DNA of 64,000 nucleotides from Macrostomum lignano (lineage: Eukaryota). Positions 50,461 through 55,505 of the stretch are shown in pieces. The notes under the pieces are model-generated. The model saw nothing but the letters and a program-made list of their open reading frames with translations, had not been told where the DNA came from and did not search any database. A program made the translations under genes and the position numbers. Where the stretch lies: positions 62,001 to 126,000 of the forward strand of contig NIVC01000888.1 of assembly GCA_002269645.1 (NCBI GenBank), in the 5' to 3' direction. Position 1 is the first letter of the stretch, and every line of letters begins with the position of its first letter.

Positions 50461-53400
50461 TCACTTGCCGTCGTTGTCGTTCCTCGCTAGCTCGCGGCGC
50501 AGAAGCTCTGACAGGCGGCGTAAGAACATCTCGCGGTCATCGTCGGCGGATCGTTTGATCTCCATGAGGCCGCCGCCGGACATGTAGCGAACTGGCCAGG
50601 CGCGCTTCAGGCTGCGTGTGGCGGGCGGCAGAAATGTAGATAATTAGTCAGAATGCGCATTTAAGGCGGCCAATCGTTTGATGTCTGGATGACGTAATGA
50701 CAGTATAAATATGGCTTGTCGGGATTATGATTAAAATCGTCGACCGAGGCCACCAACTTTGTCTAGTCTCACCTAGAGATTCCCCGACACCTGTCAAATT
50801 AGAAAAAACCGCTCTACCCGTTTCCTGGTTCCTTTGAATATCAACCTGCAGAAATTTGAGGTTTCTACAAATCATTTATCTGCGATTGTCAACAGAGTCT
50901 TAACGAGCGTATTGATTTTTGAGATCGATTTTTATTACCTTCCTGATCAAGTTGAAGATCTTCCAGAAATCATTTGTCCCTCAACCCATTATTGGTTGAA
51001 GAATATAACGAGTGGAAGGAATTGGACAATAGACAGTTTGGCAATAGACAGCGCTCCAATGGTTGTCCTCCTTCTCAGCTGAAGTGACAAGTGGCTACTC
51101 AAATCTCATATATTGAAACCGAAATCATTATTCCAACTGGGTGATCCTGTTTGAAACTAGCGATGCACTCGCAGCCCACACTGCAGTAGCTGCTCTGACA
51201 TTAGCCTTATTTTAGATATGCTTGTCTACGAAGCGCTGGAAAAACTCCTCATAAAATATATATTCTGCTCAGATTCTGTTCCATAGTGAGCAGCCATGCC
51301 ATACAACACTGATTTAGCACCGATCCATATCTCTGGGAGGAGTGCAAATTCTTTGCCGCAGCATCCTGATGAAGCTACAGATAAAGATGGCATTAGCAAA
51401 ACTAATTTTTGAGAAATATTTCTATTTATAATTTTTCTTATTTCTGCAGCAGTGAGAAACCGCCTACTGAGACCTACTAGGAAGGACTGTTCTGAGCAAA
51501 GAGAATCAGTCCAAGTCAACTGACGGAACGCTAGCAAGAAGTACCTTCTGTACTACACTACGAGTATAAATAATACGCATAAAACGTTGATTTCAACACA
51601 GCAAAGCTGGCAGGAAATTGGGCTAAACGTACTTTTCCGAATTTTATTTCTTAACTGAAGCTTCATGAGGAGGGGTTGGTATTGATGACAAGCGTTTGTT
51701 TACCGGGTAAATGTACATAGGATTTTCTAGAATTCTAGAATCGCCACGAGGTGACCGCATGACTCTATGCCCACGAGGTGGCTACGTGACTCTATGCCAA
51801 CGAAGTGGCTGCGTGACTCTATGCCCACGAGGTAGTCACGTGACTCCATGGCTATGCCCACGAGGTGGCCGCGTGACTCCATGGCTATGCCCACGAGGTG
51901 GTCGCGTGACTCTATGGCCACGAGGTGGCTGCGTGACTCTATGACCACGAGGTGGCTGCGTGACTCTATGACCACGAGGTGGCTGCGTGACTCTATGCCC
52001 ACGAGGTAGTCACGTGACTCCATGGCTATGCCCACGAGGTGGCCGCGTGACTCTATGGCTATGCCCACGAGGTGGTCGCGTGACTCCATGGCTATGCCCA
52101 CGAGTTGGCCGCGTGACTCCATGGCTATGCCCACGAGGTGGTCGCGTGACTCTATGGCCACGAGGTGGCTGCGTGACTCTGACCACGAGGTGGCTGCGTG
52201 ACTCTATGGCCACGAGGTGGATGCGTGACTCTATGACCACGAGGTGGCTGCGTGACTCTATGGCCACGAGGTGGCTGCGTGACTCTATGACCACGAGGTG
52301 GCTGCGTGACTCTATGGCCACGAGGTGAATGCGTGACTCTATGGCTATGCTGGTGTCTGACCTTGCCTGGTCTTTCTTAAAACCAATGTGTGGAAACTTC
52401 GAAAATCTATTTTTTGTTTTAAAAATGCACGCGAATCGTTTTTGATAGTTTTCCCTAGCTTAGAGAAAACGCATTAGCGACTGTCCAAATCGATAGACTT
52501 ACTTGTCAAACCCACCTCAGACCCGACACCCTGGGCATGGCTCTGAAATGAGCACTACTGTACTGATCAATGATCATTTTTACTGTTCGAAAAGTCTCTG
52601 CGTGGGAGGATAAGAAAATTCAGAAAAAAAGATTAATTTTTTCACTCGGCAGAAAAATTGTCGACATGCTATAGGCGGGGTTCAAAGCAGAATGAATTGG
52701 ATAAGATGAGCATGAGCTGGGCGGGAAACCCCGGGCCGGGACGGGTGAGACAAGCCGGCTGCGTAAATATTGGCCGAGAAGATTAGAATAATAATAATAA
52801 GCGGGAGGTGGCTGGGGGTTCTGCGATTTTCTGCAACAGTCTGGTCCTGCTGGCTGCTTCTAGGGGAGGAGTTGGCCGGGGCAGCAAAAAATGTGTTCTG
52901 CAATCAGCTTATCGGCTTTGTGCTTATTAATAATTAATTTCCTATCAACTTTTTCTCTCTCTCTCTCTCTGTCTGTGTGTCCCGCATTTTGCAACTCATC
53001 ATCTGGGCGAACACTTTGCCGCAGTGAAAGCAAAAACGAGTGGCATTGAGCGGCTGCTGCTACCCGGGCAAATCGAATGCACAAAACATCGGGACGAAAT
53101 TTGATTCTCTCGTTGGGGGAGAAAGCAACCCCGGCAACAGGAGGATTTCTCCTCCACATCCGACCTTTCGAGCTAAATCTGGCCCAATCTAAAGAAGATT
53201 AGGCTCGCTCTACAGGTCCTCGTTACGGGGGGGGGGCTTGAAATATTAGACACCTTTGATTAGCTGAGCCTGCGCAACAGTCAGGCCTGAAATGATTTGC
53301 CCCATTTCCGCCATGTGTTTCTCTGGCTGGGGTCCGGCTCCGTTGCCACGGCTGTATTTGTCTGCACAGCGGCGCTGGTCATCTACTAGAAGCAATCGAG

Positions 53401-55505
53401 AATGGACTCTGAGCGGCAACGACTCCCAAATGTGACACGGAGAGCGGCTAAGAGGAAAACCGGATGAACGTCAATTGGAGGGGGCTTAAGAAGGAGCTGT
53501 CATATATGCGAGAGGTTAGTATTTACGTAACTACATGCATTAGCTGGGATAAATCCTTGCAGAACTTTACCTTTACCCAGGAAGAGAGAATCGCCTCTCC
53601 TTCCCTTCTCTCCTTCTACTTCATCTGTCCGATTTTTCTCTGTGAATTTTCATTGCGACAATGCAGAGAGCGCCTCAATTCTTTCTCATGCGGACACCTG
53701 CCGCTTTGCTCACCGCGTTTTTCACGCTTCGCTCATTTAAATTCTCAAGCCTTGCCTTTGCCCAATATTTACAGAAGTCTGCCAGCATCGATTTTGCGCA
53801 TTTTTATAACAATTCCGCTGCGTTCGATTTTCAGACTTTGGCACGGATTCGGAGCCAATTTCATTCTAGTCTCAGCCAGACAGCCAAATCAACTCGCTGG
53901 CTAATATCCCAATAAGTGCCCTGTAAAAGGGATAATAAAATCATCTCTAAAATCAATGTAGCACATTGGGGCTGGAATGGGAGGCGGTTGGGTTTGAAGC
54001 CGCTGACAGACAGATAGACAGACAAACAGACAGACAGACAGACAGACAGGCAGACAGACAAACAGACAGACAGACAGACAGACAGACAGACAGACAGACA
54101 GACAGACAGACAGACAGACAGACAGACAGACAGACAGACAGACAGACAGACAGACAGACAGACAGACAGACAGACAGACAGACAGACAGACAGACAGACA
54201 GACAGACAGACAGACAGACAGACAGACAGACAGACAGACAGACAGACAGACAGACAGACAGACAGACAGACAGACAGACAGACAGACAGACAGACAGACA
54301 GACAGACAGACAGACAGACAGACAGACAGACAGACAGACAGACAGACAGACAGACAGACAGACAGACAGCATGCTTTTTGCTCTGATTAACCCAGCCACT
54401 CACTGATGCTCCTCGGCAAATTCGGCCTTCATATGGCCGGCCGGCTCCTTCATTGGGCGGGATAGGCAGACGGCCGCCAGAGCTGCAATGCAAGAAGTTG
54501 GCACCTAGTTAGCTGGACTAGACCTGGTTAGACAGACTAGTGAACCAAATGAATTAATGGCTAATAAAACGTTATTACCGCAACGGGAAGATTTAACTGT
54601 TTTTTATAGTTCTGGTTAATTTGGGACCGAATTATTCCTTGCATTTCTGAGACGGAGAGAAGCGAAAAAAGAGGCGGACAGAAATAAAGGGGGTTACAGA
54701 CAGGAGAAGACTAATAGAGACAGTTAGAGACGGGCAGATATAGACAGCGACAGAGAGCTGGACAGATAGAGACAGATAGAGACAGATAGAGACAGGCAGA
54801 GACAGGCAGAGACAGGCAGAGACAGGCAGAGACAGGCAGAGACAGATAGAGACAGATAGAGACAGGCAGAGACAGGCAGAGACAGGCAGAGACAGGCAGA
54901 GACAGGCAGAGACAGATAGAGACAGGCAGAGACAGGCAGAGACAGGCAGAGACAGGCAGAGACAGGCAGAGACAGATAGAGACAGATAGAGACAGGCAGA
55001 GACAGATAGAGACAGATAGAGACAGGCAGAGACAGGCAGAGACAGGCAGAGACAGATAGAGACAGATAGAGACAGGCAGAGACAGGCAGAGACAGGCAGA
55101 GACAGGCAGAGACAGGCAGAGACAGATAGAGACAGGCAGAGACAGGCAGAGACAGGCAGAGACATGCAGAGACAGGCAGAGACAGGCAGAGACAGATAGA
55201 GACAGATAGAGACAGGCAGAGACAGGCAGAGACAGGCAGAGACAGGCAGAGACAGGCAGAGACAGATAGAGACAGGCAGAGACAGGCAGAGACAGGCAGA
55301 GACAGGCAGAGACAGGCAGAGACAGGCAGAGACAGGCAGAGACAGGCAGAGACAGATAGAGACAGGCAGAGACAGGCAGAGACAGGCAGAGACAGGCAGA
55401 GACAAGCAGAGACAGGCAGAGACAGACAGAGACAGATAGGCGGTTAATATCACCTGTGGGTGCAGCAGATGCACGCCAACCCTCTGCACTGCGGTGCCCC
55501 ATCAT
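50461..55505 (-). CDS. Putative neuropeptide/peptide-hormone precursor, 102 aa, 4 exons
   Basis: Exons 55505-55454, 54482-54404, 52542-52516, 50611-50461, all GT-AG with matching phases 1/2/2. Product: [108 protein letters not shown] follows at about 50365. Confidence 0.65.
51740..52345. repeat. 20/26 bp minisatellite (CCACGAGGTGGCTGCGTGACTCTATG)
   Basis: Direct repeats in an intron of the precursor gene. Confidence 0.93.
54005..54368. repeat. (GACA)n microsatellite
   Basis: Direct observation. Confidence 0.97.
54760..55435. repeat. 10 bp minisatellite (GAGACAGGCA/GAGACAGATA)
   Basis: Fills intron 1 of the precursor gene. Confidence 0.95.

What the first reader, a model, noticed from the sequence alone, without database searches (positions are those of the whole stretch)
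50461..55505. Hidden four-exon gene encoding a novel prohormone-like peptide precursor
It is missed by the ORF track because its exons are 52, 79, 27 and 151 nt. All junctions are canonical and phase-consistent. The product has a weak signal-like segment ([10 protein letters not shown]), KR-flanked [15 protein letters not shown], further RR sites, and a terminal G-K that would permit amidation. I do not recognise the peptide from known families, so it may be a new neuropeptide. The signal peptide is the weakest part, and exon 1 may be different.
Basis: partly seen in the sequence, partly recalled or inferred. Interest (0 to 1): 0.7.

Follow-up and report, generated by a model that had tools for sequence, protein, structure and literature searches.

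The report
Flatworm secreted peptide-precursor gene, mis-modelled

Summary
The window is Macrostomum lignano contig NIVC01000888.1, reversed. They belong to the GenBank gene BOX15_Mlig029116g2, an 89-aa hypothetical protein whose model was built from RNA-seq. The true exon 1 is 57700-57739 and supplies a proper signal peptide, [21 protein letters not shown]. The 27-nt exon does not exist; nine open AG..27 nt..GT candidates occur by chance.

An exhaustive HMMER scan of 1.84 billion proteins found one true relative, a 103-aa M. lignano paralogue. It has the same three-exon layout: a 40-nt first exon and intron phases 1 and 2. Between the paralogues, the dibasic-flanked core (A/G)WPVRYM(S/A)GGGLMEI matches at 13 of 15 residues and is 88% identical in DNA. 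The other segments are 40-55% identical in DNA and contain indels. That pattern is typical of a processed bioactive peptide.

The C-terminal G-K is absent from the paralogue, so amidation is not a family feature. Nothing matched in Pfam, PDB sequences or the searchable literature. The UniRef names 'Adipokinetic hormone' and 'Promotilin' are not supported.

Verdict: a real, lineage-restricted, prohormone-like precursor. Its neuronal role, processing and wider conservation remain untested. Interest is moderate.

The parts
57700..57739 (-). True exon 1 (40 nt). ATG at 57739-57737. Encodes [13 protein letters not shown] plus the first base of Ala14. Followed by the donor gtaagc.
   Evidence: Six-frame match to P0001; sequence; identical in all three genomic copies.
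54483..57699 (-). Intron 1 (phase 1, 3217 nt).
54404..54482 (-). Encodes the end of the signal peptide (ALAAVCLS) and the spacer [18 protein letters not shown] plus two bases of His40.
   Evidence: The one difference among the copies is synonymous (CTA/CTG, Leu20).
50612..54403 (-). Intron 2 (phase 2, 3792 nt). Contains the (GACA)91 array (54005-54369) and the 27/33-nt array (51743-52343). All nine chance 27-nt 'exon' candidates lie here.
50461..50611 (-). Encodes the rest of the precursor, with stop TGA at 50461-50463.
50557..50601 (-). Conserved core peptide [15 protein letters not shown]. Preceded by Lys-Arg (50602-50607) and followed by Lys-Arg (50551-50556).
   Evidence: 13 of 15 residues identical to the paralogue; the KR+core+KR block is 87.7% identical in DNA against 40-55% for the other segments.
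50464..50550 (-). C-terminal segment [27 protein letters not shown] plus Gly-Lys. Predicted amphipathic helix with the partly conserved motif L-x-RRL-x-EL.
   Evidence: Helical moment 0.98, reached by 9 of 2000 shuffles; AF2 helix 54-87 at pLDDT about 70-79; alignment.
50365..50370 (-). AATAAA, the likely polyadenylation signal, about 90 nt after the stop codon.
   Evidence: from sequence only; its use as a signal is inferred.

Best explanation
This is a real, transcribed three-exon gene of Macrostomum lignano (BOX15_Mlig029116g2, one of three near-identical genomic copies). It encodes an 89-aa secretory peptide precursor.

Inferred mechanism:
1. The N-terminal signal peptide (residues 1 to about 21) directs the protein into the secretory pathway.
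2. A prohormone convertase cuts after Lys-Arg 42-43 and Lys-Arg 59-60, and a carboxypeptidase trims the basic residues.
3. This releases a non-amidated 15-mer, [15 protein letters not shown] (average mass about 1667 Da), as the main bioactive product.
4. The acidic N-terminal spacer is probably inert.
5. The C-terminal 27-residue amphipathic helix is either a second peptide (amidated in this copy only) or a sorting or pro-region.

The product most likely acts as an extracellular signal (neuropeptide or peptide hormone) of a family so far seen only in this species.

Shown here: the gene structure, a transcript-based annotation, the hydrophobic leader, and conservation of the core between paralogues.
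Inferred only: cleavage, secretion, cell type and signalling function.
For:
- The window gene span is identical to NIVC01000888.1.
- The GenBank annotation of Mlig_3_7 derives from a genome-guided RNA-seq transcriptome (StringTie/TACO/TBONE, 'coregenes'), so the splice pattern rests on transcripts (PMC5730564).
- Signal peptide: an 18-residue uncharged run, [18 protein letters not shown], after Lys3; maximum 9-residue Kyte-Doolittle mean 3.23; small residues at -3 and -1 (C-L-S|R).
- The paralogue group (P0002, P0005-P0008; full form 103 aa) was found by an exhaustive phmmer scan at E=3.2e-6.
- The paralogue has the same exon plan, 40/94/178 nt against 40/79/151 nt, with intron phases 1 and 2 in both.
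- The core and both flanking dibasic sites are conserved. Three synonymous changes lie inside the core. The other segments are 40-55% identical in DNA and contain indels.
- Differences among the paralogue-B copies all fall outside the core.
- AF2 predicts no globular fold: residues 22-55 have pLDDT below 50, and only the leader helix and the C-terminal helix are predicted.
- M. lignano has a nervous-system-expressed PC2 homologue whose knock-down is lethal, so the processing machinery is present (PMC4490696).
Against: - No expression site, peptide detection or receptor is known.
- No orthologue was detected in any other species. Conservation therefore rests on one within-species paralogue pair.
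- The core shows fewer synonymous differences at identical residues (3 of 16) than the other segments (10 of 23). A short gene-conversion tract or a DNA- or RNA-level constraint cannot be fully excluded.
- The three copies of this gene are 97-100% identical in introns as well, so they give no test of selection.
- The amidation signal is not conserved.
- The signal peptide was judged by hydropathy and the -3/-1 rule, not by a trained predictor.
- The AF2 model rests on a three-sequence alignment.
Confidence: 0.6

Rival explanations
1. It is a secreted peptide or small protein of a non-neural gland, for example prostate (seminal fluid), adhesive, rhabdite or pharyngeal glands. It acts outside the body or in a mating partner rather than as an internal neuropeptide. 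It may or may not be cleaved at the dibasic sites.
For: - It has the same signal peptide and small size.
- The family is apparently lineage-restricted, as is common for fast-evolving reproductive and gland proteins.
- It is present in several genomic copies.
Against: - The conservation pattern (a short dibasic-flanked core kept, spacers free to vary) is typical of processed signalling peptides rather than structural gland proteins.
- The C-terminal helix is net acidic by residue count, so it is not like a cationic antimicrobial peptide.
- The gene identifiers were not found in the held supplements of two M. lignano expression papers. That is weak evidence, because those papers may use other identifiers.
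Confidence: 0.22
2. It is a small secreted protein that acts intact (68 aa after signal-peptide removal). The conserved core and the helix would form one binding surface, and the dibasic pairs would be conserved for structure or binding rather than cleavage.
For: - The RR inside the C-terminal helix (L-x-RRL-x-EL) is conserved between paralogues, yet it sits in a predicted helix where cleavage is less likely. So not every dibasic pair need be a cleavage site.
- AF2 extends the helix from residue 54, across the KR at 59-60.
Against: - The region between the leader and residue 55 is predicted to be disordered.
- There are no cysteines in the mature part.
- The spacers differ in length and sequence between the paralogues.
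Confidence: 0.1
3. It is a transcribed but non-functional or mis-annotated ORF. The similarity between the two loci would be a relic of duplication or gene conversion, with no peptide function.
For: - The ORF is short.
- No homologue exists outside the species, and no Pfam family matches.
- The core is highly identical at the DNA level.
Against: - Both paralogues keep an intact ORF and a hydrophobic leader, although the leader itself has diverged: 12 of 20 aligned leader codons change the amino acid.
- Both keep the same intron phases and both dibasic flanks, while the rest has diverged to 40-55% DNA identity with in-frame indels.
- Decay would not preserve all of these together.
Confidence: 0.08

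Closest known systems
Generic bilaterian neuropeptide / peptide-hormone precursors (for example the planarian npp/spp prohormones processed by PC2)
   Same: - About 90-100 aa, with an N-terminal signal peptide.
- Acidic spacer and a short peptide bracketed by Lys-Arg / Arg-Arg.
- The core is conserved while the spacers diverge.
- No globular fold is predicted.
- A PC2 homologue is present in the species.
   Different: - No sequence similarity to any named family: the Pfam-A scan gave no hormone family, only a sub-threshold chance match, and the phmmer scan of 1.84 billion representatives found only the species' own paralogue.
- The core is not followed by Gly, so it would not be amidated.
- There is a single core copy per precursor.
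Adipokinetic hormone precursor (the name UniRef gives A0A1I8JFX4)
   Same: A small precursor with a signal peptide and a C-terminal related peptide.
   Different: - AKH precursors carry an 8-10-residue peptide starting with Gln directly after the signal peptide, with Trp at position 8 and then Gly plus basic residues (established knowledge).
- Here the leader is followed by [10 protein letters not shown]...
- No Pfam hit.
- The name is probably an automatic prediction; that is my inference.
Promotilin (the name UniRef gives the paralogue A0A1I8H4U9)
   Same: A small secreted precursor with dibasic sites and a Glu/Leu/Arg-rich C-terminal part.
   Different: - Motilin lies directly after the signal peptide (established knowledge). 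Here the conserved peptide is internal.
- No motilin or ghrelin Pfam model hits P0008, the complete 103-aa form of that paralogue group; the UniRef entry itself (P0007) was not scanned.
- Motilin is a vertebrate family.
Pigment-dispersing factor and CRH/DH44/ELH-type precursors (resemblances recalled from memory)
   Same: The last peptide of copy A is preceded by KR, is helical and ends in Gly-Lys, as PDF precursors do. Its R/L/E-rich amphipathic helix recalls ELH and DH44.
   Different: - The Gly-Lys end is missing in the paralogue, which ends ...RRLGQE.
- No Pfam model matches.
- The best-conserved element is the upstream 15-mer, not the C-terminal peptide.

Membership tests
Secretory peptide (neuropeptide/prohormone) precursor, generic architecture | N-terminal signal peptide | tested here: met
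   With the true exon 1 the sequence has Lys3, then an 18-residue uncharged hydrophobic run, with C-L-S at positions -3 to -1. The paralogue has an equivalent leader...LVTA|LP. No trained predictor (SignalP) was available.
Secretory peptide (neuropeptide/prohormone) precursor, generic architecture | Candidate peptide bracketed by mono- or dibasic convertase sites | tested here: met
   KR before and KR after the core in copy A; RR before and KR after it in paralogue B.
Secretory peptide (neuropeptide/prohormone) precursor, generic architecture | Peptide core more conserved than the spacers among homologues | tested here: met
   13 of 15 core residues are identical. The KR+core+KR block is 87.7% identical in DNA, against 40-55% elsewhere. 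This rests on one paralogue pair within one species.
Secretory peptide (neuropeptide/prohormone) precursor, generic architecture | C-terminal amidation signal (Gly plus basic residues) | tested here: inconclusive
   G-K* ends copy A, but the paralogue ends ...LGQE*. The core itself is followed by KR with no Gly. Amidation is not obligatory for the class.
Secretory peptide (neuropeptide/prohormone) precursor, generic architecture | Expression in neurons or endocrine cells, and detection of the processed peptide | not testable with these tools
   No transcript-level or peptidomic data could be reached. The gene identifiers and the peptide strings are absent from the searchable literature and from two supplement sets.
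Adipokinetic hormone / RPCH family | A Gln-initiated 8-10-mer with Trp8 directly after the signal peptide, followed by Gly plus basic residues; match to the family profile | tested here: not met
   The sequence after the leader is [14 protein letters not shown]. The Pfam-A scan at E<=10 returned no family.
Motilin / ghrelin family | Hormone directly after the signal peptide; match to the motilin/ghrelin or motilin-associated-peptide profiles | tested here: not met
   The paralogue has LPASQEELD-KR after the leader. Pfam gave only a sub-threshold chance hit, TMEM132_C at E=0.22 on the leader.
PDF/PDH and CRH/DH44/ELH families | Conserved amidated C-terminal peptide matching the family profile | tested here: not met
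   No Pfam match. The amidation signal is not conserved in the paralogue.

The most novel reading that the evidence does not exclude
The non-amidated 15-mer (A/G)WPVRYM(S/A)GGGLMEI is the mature product of a previously undescribed flatworm (so far Macrostomum-only) neuropeptide family. The family has two paralogous precursors, is unrelated by sequence to any named bilaterian peptide family, and acts through its own, still orphan, receptor.
Probability: 0.4. Interest if true: 0.5.

Novelty: new member of a known kind. Interest (0 to 1): 0.38.

Why it matters
Macrostomum lignano is a transgenic model for regeneration, stem cells and sexual selection, but its peptide signalling is barely catalogued. 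Knock-down of its PC2 homologue is lethal in hatchlings (PMC4490696), so processed peptides matter there. This gene offers a specific, conserved, dibasic-flanked 15-mer with two precursor genes. That makes it a directly testable candidate ligand by in situ hybridisation, RNAi, peptidomics and receptor deorphanisation. It would add a lineage-restricted family to the flatworm neuropeptide repertoire.

For the scan itself there are two lessons. A by-eye model can get the informative exons right and still invent a start exon and a micro-exon. And the 'hidden' gene was already in the public annotation.

Tried and rejected
- Selection test among the three genomic copies (L001-L003): no power. The copies are 97-100% identical in introns too. 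There is 1 synonymous difference in 270 coding nt.
- Word-indexed protein searches: each returned only the query's own cluster. They failed a positive control, because neither paralogue retrieved the other, even where the query alignment held fragments of both paralogues. Their silence about other species is therefore uninformative.
- Exhaustive phmmer scan: one true relative. The third hit, P0003 (E=9.7e-4), is a repeat protein without the motif and I judged it spurious.
- Pfam-A on both paralogues and their mature parts: nothing.
- PDB sequence profile search: only weak matches (best E=0.0013, a designed repeat protein); none is a peptide hormone.
- Rfam on the whole window: nothing.
- Literature: no paper contains WPVRYM, GGGLMEI or the gene identifiers. 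Two supplement sets had no entry. General Macrostomum neuropeptide searches gave nothing specific. McVeigh et al. 2009 (PMC2749192) is not held.
- Dispersed-repeat check: the exons are not part of repeats. Only the (GACA)n array and its flank recur elsewhere in the window.
- Resemblances to PDF, ELH/DH44, galanin (GW... start), buccalin/AstA (...GGL) and NPLP1 (...AGGLMTY) were recalled from memory. I treated them as leads only, and no profile supported any of them.
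Full report
**Origin of the window.** This is P0001, 89 aa, E=1.7e-36, 87% identity over 84% of the query. P0001 is encoded on three contigs of assembly GCA_002269645.1 (Mlig_3_7). The gene span of locus L001 (NIVC01000888.1) is base-for-base identical to window 50461-57739 on the minus strand. The window is therefore M. lignano genomic DNA. It is rich in tandem repeats.

**Checking the observation.** Both have canonical AG/GT borders and both are exact parts of P0001.

The other two exons are wrong. P0001 begins [13 protein letters not shown], which is encoded at 57700-57739 and followed by gtaagc. 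The annotated mRNA joins exon 2 directly to the last exon (CA|C = His40), with no 27-nt exon. Enumeration found eleven AG..27 nt..GT intervals in the intron, and nine of them keep the frame open. A phase-consistent micro-exon is thus expected by chance. The real gene has exons of 40, 79 and 151 nt and introns of 3217 and 3792 nt, in phases 1 and 2.

**Transcript support.** I could not query reads directly. However, the GenBank annotation of Mlig_3_7 was made from the genome-guided RNA-seq transcriptome Mlig_RNA_3_7_DV1 'coregenes' set. That set was built with StringTie, TACO and TBONE, with TransDecoder ORFs (PMC5730564). The three-exon model therefore derives from transcripts. An AATAAA lies about 90 nt after the stop codon. 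A 96-aa UniRef model (P0004) instead splices at the stop codon to a downstream exon inside a 99-nt tandem repeat. I judge it an unsupported alternative model, because the transcript-based GenBank annotation does not contain it.

**The protein.** With the true exon 1, the N-terminus has Lys3 followed by an 18-residue uncharged hydrophobic run, [18 protein letters not shown]. Its maximum 9-residue hydropathy is 3.23, and small residues sit at -3 and -1.

After the leader come four elements:
- an acidic, His-rich 20-residue spacer;
- KR;
- the 15-mer [15 protein letters not shown], then KR;
- a 27-residue segment ending in G-K.

AF2, run on a shallow three-sequence alignment, predicts only the leader helix and a C-terminal helix (residues 54-87, pLDDT about 70-79). 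Residues 22-55 fall below pLDDT 50, so no globular fold is predicted. The C-terminal segment is strongly amphipathic: its helical moment of 0.98 was reached by 9 of 2000 shuffles.

**Relatives.** An exhaustive phmmer scan of 1.84 billion representative proteins found one true relative, P0002 (E=3.2e-6), plus a spurious repeat protein. P0002 is also from M. lignano (BOX15_Mlig025753g1). Its cluster includes BOX15_Mlig025753g2 and BOX15_Mlig002456g1, and the complete form is 103 aa (P0008).

The paralogue's gene (L004) has exons of 40, 94 and 178 nt with intron phases 1 and 2. That is the same plan as the window gene, including the identical 40-nt first exon length.

Alignment shows the following:
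- The core GWPVRYMAGGGLMEI matches at 13 of 15 residues.
- RR precedes it and KR follows it.
- The KR+core+KR block is 87.7% identical in DNA, with three synonymous changes.
- The leader, spacer and C-terminal parts are 55%, 40% and 46% identical and contain indels.

Differences among the paralogue-B copies all lie outside the core. A second, weaker conserved element is L-x-RRL-x-EL in the C-terminal helix. The G-K end is not conserved, since paralogue B ends ...RRLGQE.

**Limits.**
- The three copies of the window gene are 97-100% identical in introns as well, so they give no test of selection. Their only coding difference is a synonymous CTA/CTG.
- At residues identical between the paralogues, the core has fewer synonymous differences (3 of 16) than the other segments (10 of 23). 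The numbers are small, but a short conversion tract or a nucleotide-level constraint cannot be excluded.
- The word-indexed searches failed to retrieve the known paralogue. Their silence about other species means little.
- A core-only orthologue would score below the E<=0.001 cut of the exhaustive scan.
- Conservation outside M. lignano is therefore unknown, not absent.

**Comparison with known families.**
- Pfam-A at E<=10 gave no hormone family for either paralogue or their mature parts; the only hit was a sub-threshold chance match (TMEM132_C, E=0.22) on the paralogue's leader.
- A profile search of PDB sequences gave only weak matches (best E=0.0013, a designed repeat protein); none is a peptide hormone.
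- No searchable paper contains the peptide strings or the gene identifiers.
- UniRef calls the two proteins 'Adipokinetic hormone' and 'Promotilin'. Neither fits. In both of those families the hormone follows the signal peptide directly (established knowledge), and no family profile matches here.
- Resemblances recalled from memory were not supported by any test. These were the PDF-like KR...GK end, an ELH/DH44-like helix and a galanin-like GW start.

The gene works like a generic prohormone but belongs to no named family.

**Mechanism and rivals.** The most likely mechanism (about 0.6) is signal-peptide removal, then convertase cleavage at the two dibasic sites and carboxypeptidase trimming. 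This would release a free-acid 15-mer as a signalling peptide. M. lignano has a nervous-system-expressed PC2 homologue whose knock-down is lethal (PMC4490696).

The rivals are:
- a gland or seminal secretion rather than a neuropeptide (about 0.22);
- an uncleaved small secreted protein (about 0.1);
- a non-functional ORF (about 0.08).

The last is disfavoured because both paralogues keep the ORF, a hydrophobic leader, the intron phases and the dibasic flanks despite strong divergence elsewhere.

**Verdict.** The gene is real and prohormone-like, but it is already annotated as a hypothetical protein and has three exons with a different start. Amidation is not a family feature. It is a new, lineage-restricted member of a known kind, the secretory peptide precursors. 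Interest is moderate at 0.38, and it is readily testable.

Noticed in passing
window 51743-52343; 54005-54369; 54716-55435; 56246-57048: The two introns of this small gene hold four large tandem arrays: a 27/33-nt unit, (GACA)x91, a 10-nt unit x72 and a 12-nt unit x68. Array lengths differ among the three genomic copies, and this accounts for most of the indel columns in their alignment.
   Followed up: partly
window 53956-54156 and 30963-31158: The (GACA)n array and about 50 nt of its flank recur in inverted orientation at about 31 kb, at 93.5% identity. This suggests a dispersed element that carries the microsatellite.
   Followed up: partly
window about 50086-50109 (-), inside the 99-nt tandem repeat 50107-50302: A UniRef gene model (P0004, 96 aa, named 'Adipokinetic hormone') replaces the stop codon by splicing to a short exon, STVANRL*, located here. 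The transcript-based GenBank model does not use it.
   Followed up: partly
window about 59381-61698 (+) and about 40461-48421 (+): The neighbouring annotated genes are a 234-aa PH-domain protein and a 338-aa galectin. The same neighbours flank the other genomic copies where the loci reach them: the galectin in all three, the PH-domain gene in two. This indicates a segmental or whole-genome duplication (coordinates converted from L001).
   Followed up: no
window 25169-26611 (-); 13360-13983 (-); 1338-1650 (-) beside (GTA)n at about 1656-2417: There are long exon-like ORFs. By eye they resemble a Lys/Glu-rich CAF-1 large-subunit-like protein, an RRP6/EXOSC10-like 3'-5' exonuclease, and a xanthine-dehydrogenase-type FAD-domain exon next to a roughly 760-nt trinucleotide array. 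The identities were not tested.
   Followed up: no
tool behaviour: The word-indexed protein search never returned the paralogue (P0002 for a P0001 query, or the reverse). This happened even though the two share seven consecutive 5-mers, and even, where the query alignment held fragments of both paralogues and only P0001 came back. Negative results from that tool for short peptide precursors should be read with care.
   Followed up: partly
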